This document shows, piece by piece, positions 528 through 64,000 of a stretch of DNA of 64,000 bases. The translations under genes were made by a program, and so were the position numbers. Each line of letters opens with the position of its first letter. The stretch's first letter is position 1. The notes below the pieces were generated by a model. It was given only the letters and a program-made list of their open reading frames with translations. It was not told where the DNA came from and made no database searches. The stretch is from the NCBI RefSeq assembly GCF_001194135.2, contig NC_068990.1, positions 68,800,653-68,864,652 of the forward strand. Reading direction: 5' to 3'. Source of the DNA: Octopus bimaculoides. Lineage: Eukaryota.

Positions 528-970
528 TAGGCATGGCTTTGTGGTGAGGAGCTTGCTTCCCAACAACATGGTTCTGGGTTCAGTCCCACTGCGTGGCATC
601 TTGGGCATGTTTCTTCTACTATAACCTCCGGCCGACCACAGACATGTGAGTGGATTTGGTAGACGGAAACTGAAAGAAGCCAGTCGTGTATATGTATATA
701 TATATATATATATATGTATGTACATATGTGTATATTAATGCGTGTGTGTCTTTGAGTTTGGCGTTGCTCTCTCCCTCACCATCGCTCGAAAACCGATGCT
801 GGCATGTTTACGTCCCCGTAACTTAGCAGTTCGGCCTCAGCGACCGATAGAATAAGCACTGAGCTTTAAAAATAAGTCCATAGGTCGATTTCTTCGATTA
901 AAACCCTTTAAGGTGGTGCTTCAGCATGGTCATAGTCAAATGACTGAACCTAGCTAAAGAATAAAAGAAT
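528..970 (+). mobile_element. SINE family B, full length, with internal (TA)n/(TG)n microsatellite
   Basis: tRNA-like head TGGCTTTGTGGTGAGG...GGGTTCAGTCCC; body GTGGATTTGGTAGACGGAAACTGAAAGAAGCC; tail CAGCATGGTCATAGTCAAATGACTGAA...AAAGAATA; homologous to the copies at 21011 and 39171. Confidence 0.9.
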
Positions 971-2994: not shown

Positions 2995-3179
2995 GTATTT
3001 CGTCTGCCATTACGTTCTGAGTTCAAATTCCGCCGAGGTCGACTTTGCCTTTCATTCTTTCGGGGTCGATAAATTAAGTACCAGTTATGCACTGGGGTCG
3101 ATGTAATCGACTTAATCCATTTGTCTGTCCTTGTTTGTCCCCTCTGTGTGTAGCCCCTTGTGGGCAATAAAGAAATAAG
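2995..3179 (+). mobile_element. SINE family A' (variant with alternative tail), 5' end lost in the gap
   Basis: B-box GAGTTCAAATTCC and body GGGGTCGATAAATTAAGTACCAG; tail TTTGTCCCCTCTGTGTGTAGCCCCTTGTGGGC also present, inverted, at about 63345-63385. Confidence 0.85.
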
Positions 3180-3380
3180 AAACGTTGGCACACAGGGCGA
3201 AATGCTTAGCGGTATTTCGTCTGTCTTTACGTTCTGAGTTCAAATTCCGCCGAGGTCGGCTTTGCTTTTCATCCTTTCGAGGTCGATAAATTAAGCACCA
3301 GTTGCGTACTGGGGGCGTTCTAATCGACTAGCCTCCACTCCAAAAATTTCGGGCCTTGTGTCTAGAGTAGAAAATAATAT
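3180..3380 (+). mobile_element. SINE family A
   Basis: GGCGAAATGCTTAGCGGTATTTCGTC...GAGTTCAAATTCCGCCGAGG...GGCCTTGTGTCTAGAGTAG; matches the copy at 27018-27240. Confidence 0.9.
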
Positions 3381-3673
3381 TGAGACGAACGATGCATATT
3401 TTTGCATTAAAAAATTAGTACCATACAGACGTACTTATTGAGAAGAGACTAGATTGGCTAAAGAGAGAAAGAAGACGGCAGAAATGAAACAGAGAGGGAT
3501 AAAAAATGAAAGTAATTAGAATGAAAATATAGAACAAAGGGTGCAAAGGTGAAATGAATGGATATAAAGACATGTTTAAGATATAGAAGTCAAAGCAAAT
3601 ACATTCATTAAAAAAGTGTAAGAGGAAAAGAAACATCGAAGAAAATAATGGTAAAATTATAATTAACAATAGT

Positions 3674-3880
3674 TTCGATTTTTGGCAAATGCCAGGAATT
3701 TCAGAGAAGGGAGTAAGTCAATTACATTGGCCCTAGTGTTTAAGTGGTACTTATTTTATCAGCCCCGAAAGGATGAAAGGTATAGTCAGCCCCGACGGCA
3801 TTTGATCTCTGAATGTAAAGACGGGAAAAATGCCGCTAAATATTTTGCCGGCACAGTAACGTTTCTGCCAGCTCGCCGTC
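3674..3880 (-). mobile_element. SINE family A (diverged)
   Basis: Reverse-complement homology to family A; ends ...TTCTGCCAGCTCGCCG on the + strand. Confidence 0.85.
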
Positions 3881-4483
3881 TAAAAAACTTATTTTTAATA
3901 TTAAAATACACAGAGTAATTATTTAAAATTATCAAGAGTTGTATTATAGGGATTATGCATGAGAATTGCTTGGTTTAAATGGAGGTTCATAGAAAGGAGA
4001 ATTTGTTACTACCCTTGCGCCAATAGGAATAACTAAAAATAGCTAAAAGATTATCTTAATTAATAAATATGTCCACATTAACCTTTAGACCTAAACAATT
4101 TTTCGAGATATTTTTTATAATCAAACTGCTTCGCCGGTTTGCATGGATTTGCCCGACTGATCAAGTCCCCCATCATGATGCGACAACATTCGAAAGTGCA
4201 ATATTCCGTGTCTGTTTTGGTGATCTACCGAAATGTTTTGTGGAATTTAAATGAGCGATGAGATGCCGAGATAAATATAACACAGAATTGCTTTTAAGAC
4301 TCACTAATCTTAGTTCAGTTACTTATATGGATATTAGTTTAAACTTAAATACGAATAAATTCCGCCATTAAGGAAAAATCAGCAGGATCAGACTATAACA
4401 ATAATATTCTAATCGCCCGCCTAATATTCTAATATTTATTTTGAATCATATTTTCTAATGTTGATAAACATTATCTTGATATT

Positions 4484-4684
4484 CTTTTCTATTCTAGGCA
4501 CAAGGTTCGACATTTTGGGGGAGGGGACCAGTCGATTAGATCGACCCCAGTACGCAAATGGTACTTAATTTATCGACCACGAAAGGATGAAAGGCAAAGT
4601 CGACTTCGGCGGAATTTGAACCCAGAATGTAAAGTAAGACGAAATACTGTTAAGCATTTCGCCCGGTGTGCTAGCATTTCTGAC
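4484..4684 (-). mobile_element. SINE family A
   Basis: + strand GAAAGGATGAAAGGCAAAGTCGAC...GGAATTTGAACCCAGAA is the reverse complement of the family A body and B-box. Confidence 0.9.
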
Positions 4685-5650
4685 ATATCTTGATATTATT
4701 TTCAAATAATAGTCTTTATGAACATGTCTTATTATTATATTGAATCACTCTGCAGAAGTAGTTTTAAAGGACTAAATACAACAGGAGAATTTTTGAATGC
4801 CTGCAAATACGCCTTGAAATATCTGGTGTCTAACTTCTCAACGCGTAACATAATTTCTTTGACATTTTTAAAAGTCACTCATATCAGAAACCAACATTTT
4901 ATGACACTTTCCATCACCTCACATGACCGAAGACTTCTGAGATATATTCTGTAAATTTTCAAGTCACCTCCCTTGCAAGCCCCACACAATTTTGACTCTT
5001 ATTTTTATATGGTAAAAGTTACTTTACATATAATTACTTTCGTTTTTCTTTCATTTTTTCTAACCTTCTAATTTCTATAAAAACTAACAATATCATTTTT
5101 TCTAGTATTTATTTGTTAATACATGTTTCGTACTTATATGTGTGTGTAGGGAGTATATATGGAGATACATATAACATACCTTCTACATGCACATATTACA
5201 AAAAAATTTCCACGTATATGAACATGTTTGTGCGTGTACGCACGTGTGTATGTGTGTGTGCACGTGTTTTTATGTGAGTGTATTTAATACTTTAGGAAAA
5301 ATGCAATAAAATATGAATCCATATATAAAAGCTAAAAATGACAAAATGTTTCAGATATCTATTTGACAATAAACTATCAATAATATTAGAACACCGAGAT
5401 TATTGGAATGATTTTTGAACAGTCAATATCGTTTTGTAAATTGTTGCAATCTTCCATTCCGTTTTACCTCATTACTTGGATTCCCGCATTCCTTTCGTTA
5501 ACGGATTTTCTTATCTAGTGTTCTTTTTCGTCTTCGCTTTGGTTTTCGTTGTCACGCTGCGCCATTGATTGGCCGTGTTTGTATGATTGTCTACAGGTGC
5601 ATGTATATACATAAGTGTGTTGCTACACACACACACGTGCACGCACACAA

Positions 5651-35729: not shown

Positions 35730-36030
35730 GCTATATGGATATGAACATGTTTTATTAAACCAGCACGTAACCCGGCTGAGAAATGAGCTGGGCGTAGTTT
35801 GCAGGGTGACTGTCGTTCTGCTGATTTATTTTCCTATTTTCCCGTAACTGCTCCTCTTGAAATATCCTTTGAGTTCCGAAATTTTGAAGTTGAGAAAACA
35901 CTTTTTCCTCCATTCTGCACAGTTTCTTGCAAGATTCTCCAAGTTTTCTTTCCTAATGTTTAGGCGTTTCAAATCATCTTTGAATTTGTCCTCATACTGC
36001 AGAAGTGACCGGCTTACCACTGCGTCGGAA
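35730..36030 (-). pseudogene. RTE-clade LINE C-terminal relic
   Basis: ORF 35826-36020 LQYEDKFKDDLKRLNIRKENLENLARNCAEWRKKC matches the RTE/BovB-type pattern RYKD.LK..LK...I....WE.LA.DR..WR. Downstream GLIKHVHIH resembles the terminal zinc-finger-like motif. Confidence 0.7.
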
Positions 36031-36495
36031 ATTTAAATGCTGATCATGTGTATGTGTGTGTGTGGTGGGGGGTAGTAACTAAACACACGCGAATCCCTTA
36101 AACCACGTCTTAATTCGCGTACTAAAGGCAGTTTCTTTTTTCGTTGAGTGCTCAACAAAATATCTAAAATGTGTTGGGTTTATGACCAATCTATATGTAA
36201 ATAAAATAAATGGAAAGAATATATATAAAAGCAACCCTTGAAAAATAAAAAGTTATATAGAGGCTTCGTTCGCGGTACCGAAGCGTTGTATCTTGATAAT
36301 CTTGCCTTCATGTGGAATCATATATTCCTTGAGGATAAGAAGTCAAAGGCAAAGCACGTTTAGCGTTACGTAATTTCACGTTAACACAATATCTTCATGA
36401 ACGCAGTGCATCTGTCACACAGTCAGCCCCAAGCCGATCACAGCCTTGTAATTCAAATTGGTAAAAGGAAACTGAATGAAGGTTCTCATGTGTAG

Positions 36496-36702
36496 AAGCT
36501 GACCAGACGAGTTGAGTTTAAATCAAGGTGCCGGTGAGAACCACTGACGAGCGTTAATGTAAACACAATATCACTAGTGATCTAGCTATGTCCGGCGCTT
36601 AGGTAGCCTGCCTCCCTTGTTAGTAAATAAGATGGTGCGTTACTGTGGTCACGAGTTGCTTTGACTATTATTTCTAGCAATGCTGGTGCTTTAGTAACGT
36701 AT
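36496..36702 (+). repeat. Hammerhead-bearing repeat unit, copy 1 (core degenerate)
   Basis: Roughly 80% identical by eye to 36811-37041. Keeps CTGACGA (36544-36550) and a perfect stem III palindrome ATCACTAGTGAT (36570-36581), but the GAAA core reads AATA. Confidence 0.85.
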
Positions 36703-36810
36703 AAATTTTGGGCTTTCGGTTGAAAAATTTCTAACAAGCCATCCTTATTATTTATAATTTACACCTTTACTATCTATGAAATCAGCATATGATTTCTATG
36801 GTTATCTTAT

Positions 36811-37041
36811 AAGCTGACAAGGCGAGTGAGTTGTGTTTAACCCAAGGCGCCGGTGAGAGCCACTGACGAGCGTTAATGTAAACGCGAAATCACTGGTTAT
36901 CTGGCTATGCCCGGTGCTTAGGGATCTCGCCTCCGTTGTCTGTAAATAAGACTGCGTTATTGTGGCTATGAATTGTTTTTGACTCTTATTTCTAGCAATA
37001 CTGGTGCTGAATCGCGCTCCAAGTCGCTTTAGTGACGTATA
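36811..37041 (+). repeat. Hammerhead-bearing repeat unit, copy 2 (candidate non-LTR retrozyme)
   Basis: Direct repeat of copy 1, offset 315-319 bp, ending in CGTATA followed by (CA)n. Confidence 0.85.
36847..36917 (+). ncRNA. Type I hammerhead ribozyme with intact catalytic core
   Basis: Stem I AGCCA(36858-62)/TGGCT(36902-06); CTGACGA(36863-69); stem II GCGTT/AACGC with loop AATGTA; GAAA(36886-89); stem III ATCAC/GTTAT (one mismatch, 2-nt loop); cleavage triplet AUC at 36899-36901; distal stem I GCGCCGG/CCGGTGC beyond a 4x4 internal loop. Confidence 0.8.
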
Positions 37042-37379
37042 CACACACACACACACACGTAATTCTGGTTCATTGATCAGGTTTATATTTCAATTGATGA
37101 TGGAAATGTAAAACAAGGAAGGTGTATTTTATAAAACAACAACGAAAAGGTTTACAAACGAACAAAATATTTATGTTAAATCACTCAATACTTTGTTTGA
37201 CATCTGATTTATCCCGCACAAACAGTAACGATGCATGATTTCGACAAAATATTTGCAGTAACCTAGGGTTAATACTAAAGTTCTAAATATCCCGTGTTTA
37301 AACCTGCAGTATTTTGTCTTAAATCCGAAATTAATGAAGCATCATAAGCTGCCATTATATATATATTTTTTTTATGATC

Positions 37380-37760
37380 CTATGCTATTAGATTAATGCC
37401 AGGCGAGCCAGCTTGCTGTCCAAATTGAATGATATCATTATCTCCGAGCCAGTTTTTCATGCATATTGCAGACTGAGAAGGTGCACCAATCTGTTGGAAT
37501 GTACAGGTATTATGTACGATCATATAAGTTCGAAGTTTCCACAGATTATCTGAATAGATTTTAACTCTACCTGTCAAGGTATTTTCATAAATTTGTCCGA
37601 AACCGCCATAATTGTTTTCAAACTTTTAGTTAGCCCTTGTTTCATACGTTCTGCGTAACATAAAACTTTTCTTTCAACACCTTCCATGTTATTCTGCTGG
37701 TTGAAAATAAATTGGGAATGTGTGTCATATATGATACATGGACGCCAGAGAAGTATATCG
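37380..37760 (-). pseudogene. Decayed Tc1-family (DD34E) transposase C-terminal relic
   Basis: FQQ[I]GAPSQSAICMKNWLGDNDIIQFGQQAGSPGINLI[A] aligns with the Tc1 pattern FQQDNAP.H...W...WP..SPDLNPIE, with exactly 34 residues between the mutated D and E positions. Confidence 0.6.
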
Positions 37761-38425
37761 GTTGTATCACATCTGTTGCAAAGGACAAACAAAGAGTCAA
37801 AATCTACCTTTTGCAAAGATGCATTCGCAAAATATCATAATGGATGGCCGCTAGTTGACTCTTGCAACTCCATGCCGGGGACTGTAACTTTAATTTGATC
37901 GAAAACGAACATAGATAGTAATATGGCTTTAAACCAATTCATTTTAGTGTAATTTTTATTATCCGTGTAAAACTGCAGAGGATGCGGGACTCTCAGTTAC
38001 AAGTGTTATGACACTAAATCATTCGGATCAGCCAAACGGTTCCACCGACAGGACGAAATCCAAAGATTTCTAGAGAATATGACAAATACATTTGCAGAGG
38101 TTAATATCTTTTTGAATCTGAAGCTATTGAAAAGTAGGGAAGCAATTTCAACCCCATTTTTATATTATTCAGGTGGTAATTTTTTAAATATTTCAAATAT
38201 TATATTAATGCACCTGACAATAAATGAAACCTCAAATACAAGACAAAATTACGAAATATTTCATCATTCAAATATCATATAACGTAATATAAATTAATTA
38301 ACTTTATTAAGTGGAAATATTTTCTAATAGATAGTTGAGATAATTGGTTATCTTTATAGCAAATCATAATTCGAATAATGTTAAATAATTTTATATCAAG
38401 AACTTTGACTTGAACTGTAGATAGA

Positions 38426-56003: not shown

Positions 56004-56031
56004 CACTGCCATATATATACATATATATTTT

Positions 56032-56563
56032 GCAAATACTAATTGGGCACAGATAGCGTGTCAATAGCCAGCAGGAGATATCTTCCTGGGATCACAAGCT
56101 ACAGCAGCATCGACCCTTAAGGGTTAGCCACATCTAGGTGGCAAATATACCCCCACGATGTTACGCTGCTACTATTTATATCTCGCTCAGAGATTTATTA
56201 TTGCTTGACTTCACTATTTCGAGACCAGTGACTTTTCGTCACTGGAAAATGTATATATATATATTTGCATTGAGAATCACTTCCCATCGCCAACCGGTGG
56301 TTGTCACACGCGGATGTCGGGTCAATACCCACAAACTCAGGTCCATGTCGATCACATCAGGCTGGAGATGGGAATGATTACTTCTCTTTGTAAATACTGA
56401 TAGGACACAGATAATGTGTCAATAGCCAGCTAGAGGAGATGTCTTCCTGGGGTCACAAGCTACAGCAGCATCGACCCTTAAGTTTTAACCACACTTAGGT
56501 GGCAAATATACTTCACGATGTCGTGCTGCTAATGTTTATATCTCGCTCAGAAACTTATTATTG

Positions 56564-56566
<3 letters not shown>
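56032..56566. repeat. Structured direct repeat, period 358 bp (copies 56032-56206 and 56390-56566)
   Basis: Shared blocks GTGTCAATAGCCAGC, TCACAAGCTACAGCAGCATCGACCCTTAAG and TTTATATCTCGCTCAGA; the whole region lies between (TA)n tracts. Confidence 0.9.
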
Positions 56567-62682: not shown

Positions 62683-63150
62683 AATGATCTCAGATGTTGG
62701 CTCAAGGTCAGAAATTTCAGGGGATGGGTAAGCTGATTACATCAATCCCCAGTACACAACTGCTACTTATTTTATCGACTCCAAAAGGATGACAAGCAAA
62801 TTCGACCTCGGCGAAATGAGAACTCAGAACATGACATACTAATAATAAGTTTATATTTAGCATAAAGTTAACATCCAGGAAAGGATTGTTACAATGACAA
62901 AGTACTTAACAACCGTAGAGTATTCAATATGATAATGATTTTAAGTTTTGGCTCAAAGCCAGCAATTTAGAGGGAGGAGATAAATCGTTTACATTGACAC
63001 CCAGTGTTCAGCTGCTACTCATTTTATCGATTCCGAAAGGATCGAAGACAAAGTCGATCTCGGTGAGATTTGAAATCCGAATATAAAGATAGGCGAAATA
63101 CCACTAAGCATTTTGCTCGGCGTGCTAACGATTCTGCCAGCTCGCCGCCC
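62683..63150 (-). mobile_element. Two tandem family A copies (62683-62835 partial; 62932-63150 full)
   Basis: Repeated TTGGCTCAAGG/TTGGCTCAAAG tail and body; head ...GCCAGCTCGCCGCC at 63150. Confidence 0.85.
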
Positions 63151-63162
63151 TATAGTACTTAA

Positions 63163-63565
63163 TAATAATTCTTTGTACTGAAGGCACAACGCCTGAAATT
63201 CTGTGGGCGGGGGACTAGTTGATTACATTGACCCCAGTGTTTCACTAGTATTTATTTTATTGACCCGAAAGGATTAAAGGCAAAGTCAACCTCGAAGGAA
63301 TTTGAACTCAGAACATAAAGACGGACGAAATACCTATTTCTTTACTGCCCACAAGGGGCTACACACAGAGGGGACAAACAAGAACAGACAAACGGATTAA
63401 GTCGATTTTATCGACTCCAGTGCGTAACTGGCACTTAATTTATCGACCCCGAAATGATGAAAGGCAAAGTCGACCTCGGTGGAATTTGAACTCAGAACGC
63501 AGTGGCAGACGAAATACCGCTAAGCATTTTGCCCGGCGTGCTAACGGTTCTGCCAGCTCGCCACC
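63163..63565 (-). mobile_element. Composite: family A' copy joined to the body of an older family A copy
   Basis: Minus strand: head-body-alternative tail (...GTAAAGAAATAG) joined at about 63334 to GTATTTCGTCC and a second body with the standard tail. Confidence 0.85.
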
Positions 63566-63609
63566 TCAGAGAAGACTTGATAGAAGTATTATAGGTGAGC
63601 CACTGTTGT

Positions 63610-63722
63610 TCATGTTGATGTTGATGACAACGATTCTGACAATATCAGCGATGATGACGACGCCAATGATAATGATGACGATGTCAACGAGGAGTCGTAT
63701 AATGACGACAACGATGATGATA
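63610..63722. repeat. Degenerate (GAT/GAC)n trinucleotide tract
   Basis: GATGACAACGAT...GATGATGAT; gives Asp-rich pseudo-ORFs. Confidence 0.85.
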
Positions 63723-64000
63723 TCCTTGTCTGAAGTCAAGATTTTCCTCATCGATAGATAAAAATTCTCTCCTCGACTCTTATTTTCTTCTACATTCCTA
63801 TCGCAATACGAAGACTTTTGAGCGATGTAATTGCGTCTTCTTTTCACTGTTCCAGTTTCTCTGTTTTTAGCTTCATTTGATTTTAGTTTTAATCTTTACA
63901 AGTAAAAAAAAAAGACACAGAGTTTATATGTAAGCATATGTAGGTATACTTGTTGGATGTCTGTATTTAGGCACTACACACACACACACACACACATATA

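What the first reader, a model, noticed from the sequence alone, without database searches (positions are those of the whole stretch)
36811..37041. Intact-looking extended type I hammerhead ribozyme in a ~319-nt-period repeat: candidate cephalopod non-LTR retrozyme
Seen: all conserved core nucleotides are in the correct order and spacing. Stem I AGCCA/UGGCU, CUGACGA, stem II GCGUU/AACGC with loop AAUGUA, GAAA, stem III, and AUC at 36899-36901 (predicted cut after 36901). Stem I continues through a UGAG/AUGC internal loop into GCGCCGG/CCGGUGC and a further CCCAAG/UUAGGG segment. Established: natural hammerheads use loop II to stem I internal-loop contacts. Type I hammerheads in tandem units of a few hundred nt define non-LTR retrozymes, such as newt satellite 2, schistosome SM-alpha and the coral and mussel families, which yield small circular RNAs. 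Inference: the 319 nt between the two homologous cleavage sites (36582 and 36901) is a retrozyme monomer. I do not know of such a family described in octopus, but could not check.
Basis: partly seen in the sequence, partly recalled or inferred. Interest (0 to 1): 0.9.

Follow-up and report, generated by a model that had tools for sequence, protein, structure and literature searches.

The report
Decayed hammerhead-ribozyme tandem repeat relic
A 546-bp, 1.7-unit tandem repeat carries one hammerhead self-cleaving ribozyme motif with a complete catalytic core and one dead copy, so it is most likely a decayed insertion of a known kind of ribozyme-bearing mobile element, not an active or new system.

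Summary
At 36841-36923 (+) there is a type I hammerhead with every conserved core base. Helix I is 5 bp and extends through an internal loop into 12 more pairs. Helix II is 5 bp. The predicted cut follows C36901. A descriptor of this stringency is expected 0.0067 times per shuffled window, or about 3e-4 with the helix I extension.

- The repeat is 1.7 units (36495-37040, period 315-319, about 81% identity).
- The upstream hammerhead is dead (G12A, A14U, three helix mismatches).
- The downstream copy has a C·U mismatch in helix III. Its catalytic fold is predicted 6-8 kcal/mol above an alternative fold.
- Rfam gives no gathering-level hit. The best matches are HH9 at 15.9 bits and RAGATH-1-hammerhead at 11.9 bits.
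- I could obtain no other copy, and I could not verify the host.
- No RT or endonuclease coding remnant lies nearby.
- The array starts where the (TA)n tail of a tRNA-like SINE would begin and ends at (CA)9.

Best reading: a relic of a canonical metazoan type I hammerhead retroelement (a non-LTR retrozyme, or a Penelope-like-element derivative). This locus cannot release a unit-length RNA. It is a new member of a known kind at most, of modest interest.

The parts
36495..37040 (+). Whole hammerhead-bearing tandem array, about 1.7 units. It is bounded 5' by the end of a SINE body and 3' by (CA)9.
   Evidence: Direct repeat D1/D2 with spacing 318-319. blastn gives 36493-36690 vs 36808-37008 at 80.8% identity. 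Pairwise alignment. The 5' boundary comes from SINE alignment A1.
36495..36809 (+). Unit A: a full-length unit of 315 nt with a dead hammerhead. The segment 36704-36809 is present only in this unit.
   Evidence: Alignment of A against B. Unit A region 36491-36645 folds no better than shuffles (z +0.48). No Rfam hit even at E<=10.
36522..36604 (+). Degenerate hammerhead of unit A. GAAA has become AAUA (G12A, A14U). Helix I has two mismatches and helix II has one. Helix III (36570-36581, ATCACTAGTGAT) is a perfect 12-nt palindrome.
   Evidence: The helix III self-duplex is -17.4 kcal/mol.
36810..37040 (+). Unit B: a partial unit of 231 nt that carries the hammerhead with a complete core. It has a 20-nt insertion relative to A at about 37009-37028.
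   Evidence: GC 0.47 against 0.36 for the window.
36841..36923 (+). Type I hammerhead motif of unit B, including the extended helix I.
   Evidence: Sequence. Only descriptor hit in the window. Rfam HH9 aligned end to end at 15.9 bits, E 0.091 in a 96-nt search. Fold z -3.96.
36858..36906 (+). Catalytic part:
- Helix I proximal, 36858-62 / 36902-06.
- CUGACGA 36863-69.
- Helix II 36870-85.
- GAAA 36886-89.
- Weak helix III 36889-36900.
- C17 = 36901, with the predicted scissile bond between 36901 and 36902.
   Evidence: RAGATH-1-hammerhead model aligned over 36858-36906 at 11.9 bits. Energies.
36810..36950 (+). Long imperfect hairpin (rod) formed by the sequences flanking the hammerhead. It prolongs helix I, for example GGCGAG 36821-26 / CUCGCC 36926-31.
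   Evidence: The + strand folds at -52.9 kcal/mol and the - strand at -43.0. The 319-nt monomer 36583-36901 folds at -101.1 kcal/mol, z -5.06.
36333..36494 (+). Context: a diverged copy of a tRNA-like SINE on the same strand. The array begins exactly where the SINE's (TA)n tail begins in four other copies.
   Evidence: Alignment A1 with copies near 631, 21265, 39518 and 43062.
37041..37058 (+). Context: (AC)9 microsatellite abutting the 3' end of the array.
   Evidence: TRF; sequence.

Best explanation
The region 36495-37040 is an old, decayed insertion of a non-coding retroelement that carries a hammerhead ribozyme. It holds 1.7 head-to-tail units of about 315-319 nt. The element is of the kind called a non-LTR retrozyme, and a 2026 preprint argues that such elements derive from the terminal repeats of Penelope-like elements.

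In a live copy of such an element the cycle would run as follows:
1. The tandem units are transcribed.
2. The type I hammerhead in each unit cuts after C17.
3. This releases a unit-length RNA with 5'-OH and 2',3'-cyclic phosphate ends.
4. A tRNA ligase (RtcB type) circularises it into a highly base-paired circle.
5. A reverse transcriptase supplied in trans copies the circle round and round. This gives new tandem insertions.

What is shown here:
- A complete hammerhead core with helices I and II in unit B.
- The repeat structure.
- The strongly paired monomer.
- The decay of unit A.
- The absence of any coding capacity.

What is inferred from the known families: the whole life cycle, and membership of a multi-copy family.

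At this locus the cycle cannot run. Only one cut is possible, after 36901, because the upstream hammerhead has lost G12 and A14. The surviving hammerhead also has a weakened helix III.

Comparing the two units suggests the original ribozyme had a 4-bp palindromic helix III (AUCA-CUAG-UGAU). Such a helix could form either a hairpin or a 12-bp inter-ribozyme helix, as in the double hammerheads of newt satellite 2.
For: - Core and helices read directly from the sequence.
- Only hit to a strict hammerhead descriptor in the window, with 0.0067 expected per shuffled window. The helix I extension has probability about 0.048. Only about 4% of the window lies in short-range direct repeats. The joint chance expectation is therefore roughly 1e-5 per window.
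- Among 4227 Rfam families, the best matches to the motif are two different hammerhead models, each aligned in the correct register: HH9 at 15.9 bits and RAGATH-1-hammerhead at 11.9 bits.
- The 319-nt monomer folds at -101.1 kcal/mol, z -5.06. The + strand hairpin is about 10 kcal/mol more stable than the - strand.
- In the 12-pair extension of helix I, all four pairs that differ between the units stay paired. One is a double change (C-G to A-U) and three are wobble changes.
- Unit length, GC of 44-47% and the lack of an ORF, LTR, PBS or PPT match the published description: 150-450 bp and GC below 50% (PMC7229834).
- The architecture matches the 'canonical metazoan type I' description: helix I about 6 bp, helix II 4 bp, and a short palindromic helix III (PMC4209133).
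- A structure-guided restoration of helix III makes the catalytic fold isoenergetic with the MFE (-35.4 against -35.6). It also gives a -17.4 kcal/mol dimer helix.
- The array is flanked by microsatellite-like sequence at both ends. This fits the microsatellite insertion bias reported for Penelope-like elements (PMC8557442).
Against: - No Rfam hit at gathering score over the whole window and none at E<=10 over 701 nt. The sub-threshold scores would occur by chance many times in a whole genome.
- Only two copies exist, and they sit in this one locus. No third copy is in the window and none is in any searchable collection.
- The hammerhead segment is no better conserved between the units than the rest: 13 differences in 83 nt against 20 in about 125 nt.
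- With two sequences the covariation is not significant; 261 of 500 shuffles do as well.
- Helix III of unit B is predicted not to form.
- No target-site duplication can be discerned.
- The 'ancestral' helix III was chosen using the structure, so that argument is partly circular.
Confidence: 0.65

Rival explanations
1. The hammerhead is a chance look-alike. An ordinary local tandem duplication of non-coding DNA happens to contain a hairpin with CUGANGA...GAAA...UH in the right order. No ribozyme was ever there.
For: - Rfam gives no hit at gathering score, and the best score is 15.9 bits.
- Extrapolating, a genome of a few Gb would hold on the order of ten chance matches of this stringency.
- The motif is no more conserved between the units than the flanks are.
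- Helix III is weak and the MFE fold is not the catalytic one.
- The window has several other short-range duplications.
Against: - The motif, the 12-pair extension, the rod-like monomer (z -5.06) and a repeat period in the retrozyme range all coincide. That is about 1e-5 per window if the features are independent.
- The two best Rfam matches out of 4227 families are both hammerhead models.
- The differences in the helix I extension keep pairing, through G·U on the + strand only.
- Helix III of unit A is a perfect palindrome, as in known canonical metazoan hammerheads.
Confidence: 0.15
2. The array is a fragment of an autonomous Penelope-like element. Two 5'-truncated 3' ends, or a piece of its pseudo-LTR, inserted in tandem, rather than a dedicated small non-autonomous retrozyme.
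For: - Penelope-like elements carry type I hammerheads in their pseudo-LTRs, form partial tandems and prefer microsatellite targets (PMC4209133; PMC8557442).
- A 2026 preprint relates retrozymes phylogenetically to pseudo-LTRs.
- The array is flanked by a SINE tail position and by (CA)9.
Against: - No RT or GIY-YIG remnant appears among ORFs from 35.2 to 39.2 kb or among the ten best ORFs of the window (Pfam).
- The hammerhead is of the canonical type, not the minimal PLE type. The PLE type has a 7-8 bp helix II, a bulged base 5' of stem II and no helix III.
- The period is 319 nt, not kilobases.
Confidence: 0.13
3. The hammerhead is part of a SINE, as in the schistosome SM-alpha family. The upstream tRNA-like SINE and the hammerhead repeat would form one composite pol III element.
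For: The SINE copy at 36333-36494 lies directly upstream on the same strand. From my own knowledge, SM-alpha is a SINE-like element that carries a hammerhead.
Against: - Four other copies of the same SINE in the window end in a (TA)n tail and have no hammerhead unit.
- ARAGORN finds no tRNA-like sequence in or near the unit.
- The units contain T runs that would stop pol III.
Confidence: 0.03
4. Unit B's hammerhead is a domesticated host ribozyme, like the conserved intronic HH9 of amniotes, that processes a host transcript.
For: The best Rfam match is the HH9 model, aligned over its full length. Unit B keeps the core while unit A lost it.
Against: - The score is far below the HH9 gathering score (15.9 against 52).
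- The asymmetry between the units, about 3 against 8 damaging changes, is not significant.
- Helix III is impaired.
- No gene or exon is recognisable in the window.
- No orthologous sequence is available to test conservation.
Confidence: 0.03

Closest known systems
Non-LTR retrozymes of metazoans: tandem repeats with type I hammerheads in coral, mussel and axolotl, and newt satellite 2 (Cervera & de la Pena 2020, PMC7229834)
   Same: - Type I hammerhead inside a head-to-tail repeat of a few hundred nt (here 315-319).
- GC below 50%.
- No ORF, LTR, PBS or PPT.
- A monomer predicted to be highly base-paired.
- A short palindromic helix III that suggests action as a dimer.
   Different: - Only 1.7 units are present, and they are 19% diverged.
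- One of the two hammerheads is dead and the other is impaired.
- Genomic copy number, expression and circular RNA are unknown.
- There is no sequence similarity to any described family that I could check.
Hammerheads in the pseudo-LTRs of Penelope-like elements (Cervera & de la Pena 2014, PMC4209133; Craig et al. 2021, PMC8557442)
   Same: - Type I topology.
- Partial tandem arrangement.
- Microsatellite at the insertion borders.
- Likely dependence on a Penelope-like reverse transcriptase.
   Different: - No RT or GIY-YIG coding sequence is nearby.
- The architecture is canonical, not 'minimal'.
- The repeat period is 319 nt rather than about 3 kb.
Rfam Hammerhead_HH9 (RF02275), the conserved intronic hammerhead of amniotes
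   Same: The secondary-structure layout is the same, including a helix I interrupted by an internal loop and then continued. The model aligns end to end.
   Different: The score is 15.9 bits against a gathering score of 52. There is little primary-sequence similarity outside the core, and the context is a repeat, not a conserved intron.
Schistosome SM-alpha, a SINE-like element with a hammerhead
   Same: A type I hammerhead in a short non-coding interspersed or tandem element, here adjacent to a tRNA-derived SINE.
   Different: The hammerhead unit is not part of the SINE. Other copies of the SINE lack it, and the unit has no tRNA-like head.

Membership tests
Hammerhead ribozyme, type I | Conserved catalytic core in order: C3 U4 G5 A6 N7 G8 A9; G12 A13 A14; A15.1-U16.1; H17 | tested here: met
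   In unit B: CUGACGA 36863-69, GAAA 36886-89, U36900 and C36901. Unit A fails this test; its GAAA has become AAUA.
Hammerhead ribozyme, type I | Helices I and II flank the core, with helix I open-ended (type I topology) | tested here: met
   Helix I is 5 bp plus a 12-pair extension. Helix II is 5 bp with G10.1-C11.1.
Hammerhead ribozyme, type I | Helix III closing the three-way junction | tested here: inconclusive
   The pairs are A-U, U-A, C·U, A-U around a CUGG loop. Ensemble probability is about 0, and the catalytic fold lies 6-8 kcal/mol above the MFE. Short helix III is normal for metazoan type I hammerheads that act as dimers.
Hammerhead ribozyme, type I | Match to a curated covariance model at its gathering score | tested here: not met
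   No hit over the whole window. HH9 scores 15.9 against 52. RAGATH-1-hammerhead scores 11.9 against 56.3.
Hammerhead ribozyme, type I | Tertiary contact between loop 2 and the internal loop of helix I | not testable with these tools
   Loops of suitable size and position exist: AAUGUA, and UGAG/AUGC. The contact nucleotides cannot be assessed from one sequence.
Hammerhead ribozyme, type I | Covariation of the helices among homologues | tested here: inconclusive
   Only two sequences are available. There is one double and three single compensating changes in the helix I extension, and 261 of 500 shuffles do as well.
Hammerhead ribozyme, type I | Self-cleavage at the predicted site | not testable with these tools
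   Needs in vitro transcription.
Non-LTR retrozyme | Head-to-tail repeat units of about 150-450 bp with low GC, no ORF and no LTR/PBS/PPT | tested here: met
   Period 315-319. GC 0.44-0.47. Only short spurious ORFs with no homologues.
Non-LTR retrozyme | A complete type I hammerhead in at least two consecutive units (criterion for an active element, 10.64898/2026.07.22.740005) | tested here: not met
   Unit A's hammerhead has lost G12 and A14 and has three helix mismatches.
Non-LTR retrozyme | Multi-copy family dispersed in the genome | not testable with these tools
   No host genome is available. No further copy is in the window or in the viral, metagenome or prokaryote collections.
Non-LTR retrozyme | Unit-length linear and circular RNA in vivo | not testable with these tools
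   No transcriptome access. The predicted monomer is strongly structured (z -5.06), which is compatible.
Penelope-like element (pseudo-LTR hammerhead) | RT plus GIY-YIG ORF between or next to the repeats | tested here: not met
   No Pfam match among ORFs from 35.2 to 39.2 kb or among the best ORFs of the window.
Penelope-like element (pseudo-LTR hammerhead) | Minimal hammerhead architecture: 7-8 bp helix II, a bulged base 5' of stem II and no helix III | tested here: not met
   Helix II is 5 bp without a bulge, and helix III is present and palindromic in unit A.
SM-alpha-like SINE with hammerhead | tRNA-like pol III head within the same unit as the hammerhead | tested here: not met
   ARAGORN finds nothing. 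The adjacent SINE family lacks the hammerhead in its other four copies.

The most novel reading that the evidence does not exclude
The family would have live tandem arrays elsewhere in the genome that produce abundant circular RNAs of about 320 nt, through a canonical type I hammerhead with a palindromic helix III that acts as a dimer. The library I could search holds no paper that links retrozymes with cephalopods. It holds only a count of 235 Rfam hammerhead loci in the giant squid genome.
Probability: 0.25. Interest if true: 0.5.

Novelty: new member of a known kind. Interest (0 to 1): 0.3.

Why it matters
If the family is real and live elsewhere in the host genome, it would add another animal lineage to those that make small self-cleaving circular RNAs. 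It would also give a further test case for the proposed dependence of retrozymes on Penelope-like elements. The locus itself is a decayed relic. Type I hammerheads in short tandem repeats are already known 'from molluscs to arthropods' (PMC7229834), so a specialist would not be surprised. The practical value is as a seed sequence for a genome-wide and transcriptome-wide search.

Tried and rejected
- **Rfam scans.** The gathering threshold over the whole window gave nothing. The E-value threshold over 701 nt gave nothing relevant. Weak hammerhead hits appeared only in 96-nt and 53-nt searches.
- **Other copies through spurious ORFs.** The 84-aa ORF over the hammerhead had no protein homologues.
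- **Other copies through exact or degenerate DNA patterns.** Viral, metagenome (two scans) and prokaryote genome collections all gave nothing.
- **Sequence strings in the literature.** Nothing was found.
- **Supplement of PMC7229834.** It does not mention cephalopods.
- **My own covariance model.** A model built from the two units found no third copy in the window with filters off.
- **Host identification.** A repeat-derived ORF had no homologues. An exact look-up of a 191-aa window ORF was not on record. No real coding sequence was found in the window. I left the third large protein search and the representative-library search unused, because two null results made success unlikely.
- **CpG decay to date the two units.** This was uninformative. 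The window's CpG observed/expected ratio is 0.86, and the losses were 4 against 2.
- **Target-site duplication.** None was convincing.
- **Possible Tc1/mariner remnant at 37383-37996 (-).** This was my impression only, and Pfam does not support it.

Full report
**Observation.** The window is a gap-containing draft of a eukaryotic genome, rich in microsatellites. It has 14 runs of N (5079 N in total), and GC is 33% with the N counted or 36% without.
- Helix I AGCCA 36858-62 / UGGCU 36902-06.
- CUGACGA 36863-69.
- Helix II GCGUU / AACGC 36870-85, with loop AAUGUA.
- GAAA 36886-89.
- AUC 36899-901, so the cut would follow C36901.
- Internal loop UGAG / AUGC.
- GCGCCGG 36847-53 / CCGGUGC 36911-17.
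- CCCAAG 36841-46 / UUAGGG 36918-23, with one A·A mismatch.

All conserved core positions are satisfied: C3 to A9, G12 to A14, A15.1-U16.1 and H17. G10.1-C11.1 is also present.

**Is it more than chance?** A regular-expression scan for CTGANGA...GAAA gives a dozen sites, but only 36863 has the helices. I wrote a descriptor requiring helix I >=5 bp, helix II >=5 bp and helix III >=2 bp. It hits once in the real window and 0.0067 times per dinucleotide-shuffled window, 2 hits in 300 shuffles. A further helix of at least 7 bp beyond an internal loop has probability about 0.048 for random flanks of this composition. About 4% of the window lies in short-range direct repeats.

The joint expectation is therefore of the order of 1e-5 per window. 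Extrapolated to a genome of a few Gb, the bare motif would occur by chance some hundreds of times, the extended motif about ten times, and the extended motif inside a tandem repeat less than once. The 89-nt motif folds at -35.3 kcal/mol, z -3.96.

**Covariance models.** There is no Rfam hit at gathering score in the window and none at E<=10 in a 701-nt search. With the laxest filters on 96 nt, the best of 4227 families is Hammerhead_HH9. It aligns end to end in the expected register, but at 15.9 bits against a gathering score of 52, E 0.091. On the 53-nt catalytic part the best family is RAGATH-1-hammerhead, at 11.9 bits, E 4.7. It is suggestive that two different hammerhead models come out on top, but neither score is evidence on its own. 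Unit A gives no hit at all.

**The repeat.** There are just two copies, 36493-36690 and 36808-37008, at 80.8% identity. Tandem Repeats Finder does not report the array. A pairwise alignment defines two units:
- Unit A, 36495-36809, is full length at 315 nt.
- Unit B, 36810-37040, is 231 nt. It has a 20-nt insertion and is truncated relative to A.

That makes 1.7 units. The distance between the homologous C17 positions, 36582 and 36901, is 319 nt.

Unit A's hammerhead is dead. GAAA has become AAUA (G12A, A14U), helix I has two mismatches and helix II has one. The unit A region folds no better than shuffled sequence (z +0.48).

Differences between the units are spread evenly: 13 in the 83-nt hammerhead and 20 in about 125 nt outside it. 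So the two copies show no sign of purifying selection on the ribozyme. Nothing in the pair argues against neutral decay.

In the 12-pair extension of helix I, all four pairs that differ between the units remain paired. One is C-G to A-U and three become G·U. With two sequences this is not significant. The wobble pairs work only on the + strand, and the + strand hairpin is about 10 kcal/mol more stable than the - strand.

**State of the surviving hammerhead.** Helix III of unit B is A-U, U-A, C·U, A-U around a CUGG loop. ViennaRNA gives the catalytic secondary structure -27 to -29 kcal/mol. A competing fold that pairs UGAC of the core with GUUA 36896-99 scores -35.3. Helix III has about zero ensemble probability.

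In unit A the same segment, ATCACTAGTGAT at 36570-36581, is a perfect palindrome. If unit B is given A's helix III and C at 36915, the catalytic fold becomes isoenergetic with the MFE (-35.4 against -35.6). The helix III self-duplex rises from -7.2 to -17.4 kcal/mol. This restoration used the structure as its guide, so it is an inference.

The result fits the published description of canonical metazoan type I hammerheads. They have a helix I of about 6 bp, a helix II of 4 bp and a short helix III capped by a small palindromic loop. They are inefficient alone but active as dimers in tandem repeats (PMC4209133; PMC7229834). It does not fit the 'minimal' hammerheads of Penelope-like elements, which have a 7-8 bp helix II, a bulged base and no helix III.

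**The monomer.** The 319 nt between the two C17 positions folds at -101.1 kcal/mol, z -5.06. The sequences on either side of the hammerhead pair with each other and prolong helix I into a rod. Published retrozyme circles are drawn as comparable minimum-free-energy structures (figure legends). GC is 44-47% against 36% for the window. This is within the published range for these repeats, below 50%.

**Surroundings.** Pfam finds no domain in the ORFs between 35.2 and 39.2 kb or in the ten most protein-like ORFs of the window. So no reverse transcriptase or GIY-YIG endonuclease remnant lies nearby.

Directly upstream, 36333-36494 is a diverged copy of a tRNA-like SINE on the same strand. The window holds four other copies. 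In those the body is followed by a (TA)n/(TG)n tail, and here the hammerhead array begins at exactly that point. The 3' end of the array abuts (AC)9 at 37041-58. I found no convincing target-site duplication.

Insertion into microsatellites is reported for Penelope-like elements (PMC8557442). This genome is so rich in microsatellites that the point is weak. ARAGORN finds no tRNA-like sequence, and the other SINE copies lack the hammerhead. So the array is not part of the SINE.

**Related sequences.** I could not obtain any.
- The spurious 84-aa ORF across the hammerhead has no homologue among the predicted proteins.
- Exact and degenerate core patterns find nothing in the viral, metagenome or prokaryotic genome collections.
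- The literature holds no matching sequence string.
- A covariance model built from the two units finds no third copy in the window with filters off.

The host could not be identified either.

**Literature.** Non-LTR retrozymes are tandem repeats of 150-450 bp with type I hammerheads. [quoted passage not shown] They are known in cnidarians, a mussel and amphibians, and are said to occur 'from molluscs to arthropods' (PMC7229834). A 2026 preprint defines an active element as one with at least two consecutive units carrying complete hammerheads, and derives retrozymes from the pseudo-LTRs of Penelope-like elements (10.64898/2026.07.22.740005). The giant squid genome paper lists 235 Rfam 'hammerhead 1' loci without further analysis (PMC6962438). 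No paper in the library links 'retrozyme' with a cephalopod.

**Verdict.** The most likely explanation, at about 0.65, is a decayed 1.7-unit insertion of a retroelement bearing a canonical type I hammerhead. That means a non-LTR retrozyme, possibly derived from a Penelope-like element.

At this locus the element is not functional. The upstream ribozyme is dead, so no unit-length RNA can be released, and the remaining ribozyme has an impaired helix III. It works like a retrozyme, but it fails the test for an active retrozyme, and family membership could not be tested because no other copies were available.

The rivals and their rough weights:
- A chance look-alike in an ordinary duplication, about 0.15.
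- A fragment of an autonomous Penelope-like element, about 0.13. This overlaps with the main reading.
- A SINE composite, about 0.03.
- A domesticated host ribozyme, about 0.03.

Novelty is at most a new member of a known kind, and interest is modest.

Noticed in passing
window 36333-36494(+), ~530-700(+), ~21190-21400(-), ~39490-39640(-), ~43000-43200(-): A tRNA-derived, SINE-like family has at least five copies in 64 kb. Each body is followed by a (TA)n/(TG)n tail. The copy at 36333-36494 is the most diverged and is the one interrupted by the hammerhead array (alignment A1).
   Followed up: partly
window 3000-3190(-), 3673-3915, 4445-4690, 43469-43789, 63420-63761: A second interspersed repeat family shows up through a recurring spurious translation (LIYRPRKNERQSRPRRNLNSE...). 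It has no protein homologues.
   Followed up: partly
window 2995-3329, 15657-15969, 56029-56566, 62981-63565: Other short-range direct repeats, with offsets of 183-417 nt and 73-89% identity. None contains a hammerhead core.
   Followed up: partly
window 37383-37996 (-): Three consecutive ORF fragments of high sequence complexity looked to me like the C-terminal part of a Tc1/mariner transposase (FQQ.GAP...). Pfam gives no match even at E<=5, so this remains only an impression.
   Followed up: partly
window 36570-36581: A perfect 12-nt palindrome, ATCACTAGTGAT, forms helix III of the dead unit A hammerhead. Its self-duplex is -17.4 kcal/mol. This suggests the original ribozyme could act as a double hammerhead.
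   Followed up: yes
window, 14 runs of N (e.g. 2046-2994, 48177-48804): The window holds 5079 N in 14 assembly gaps, many next to microsatellites. None lies within 36000-37500, so the hammerhead locus is not affected.
   Followed up: yes
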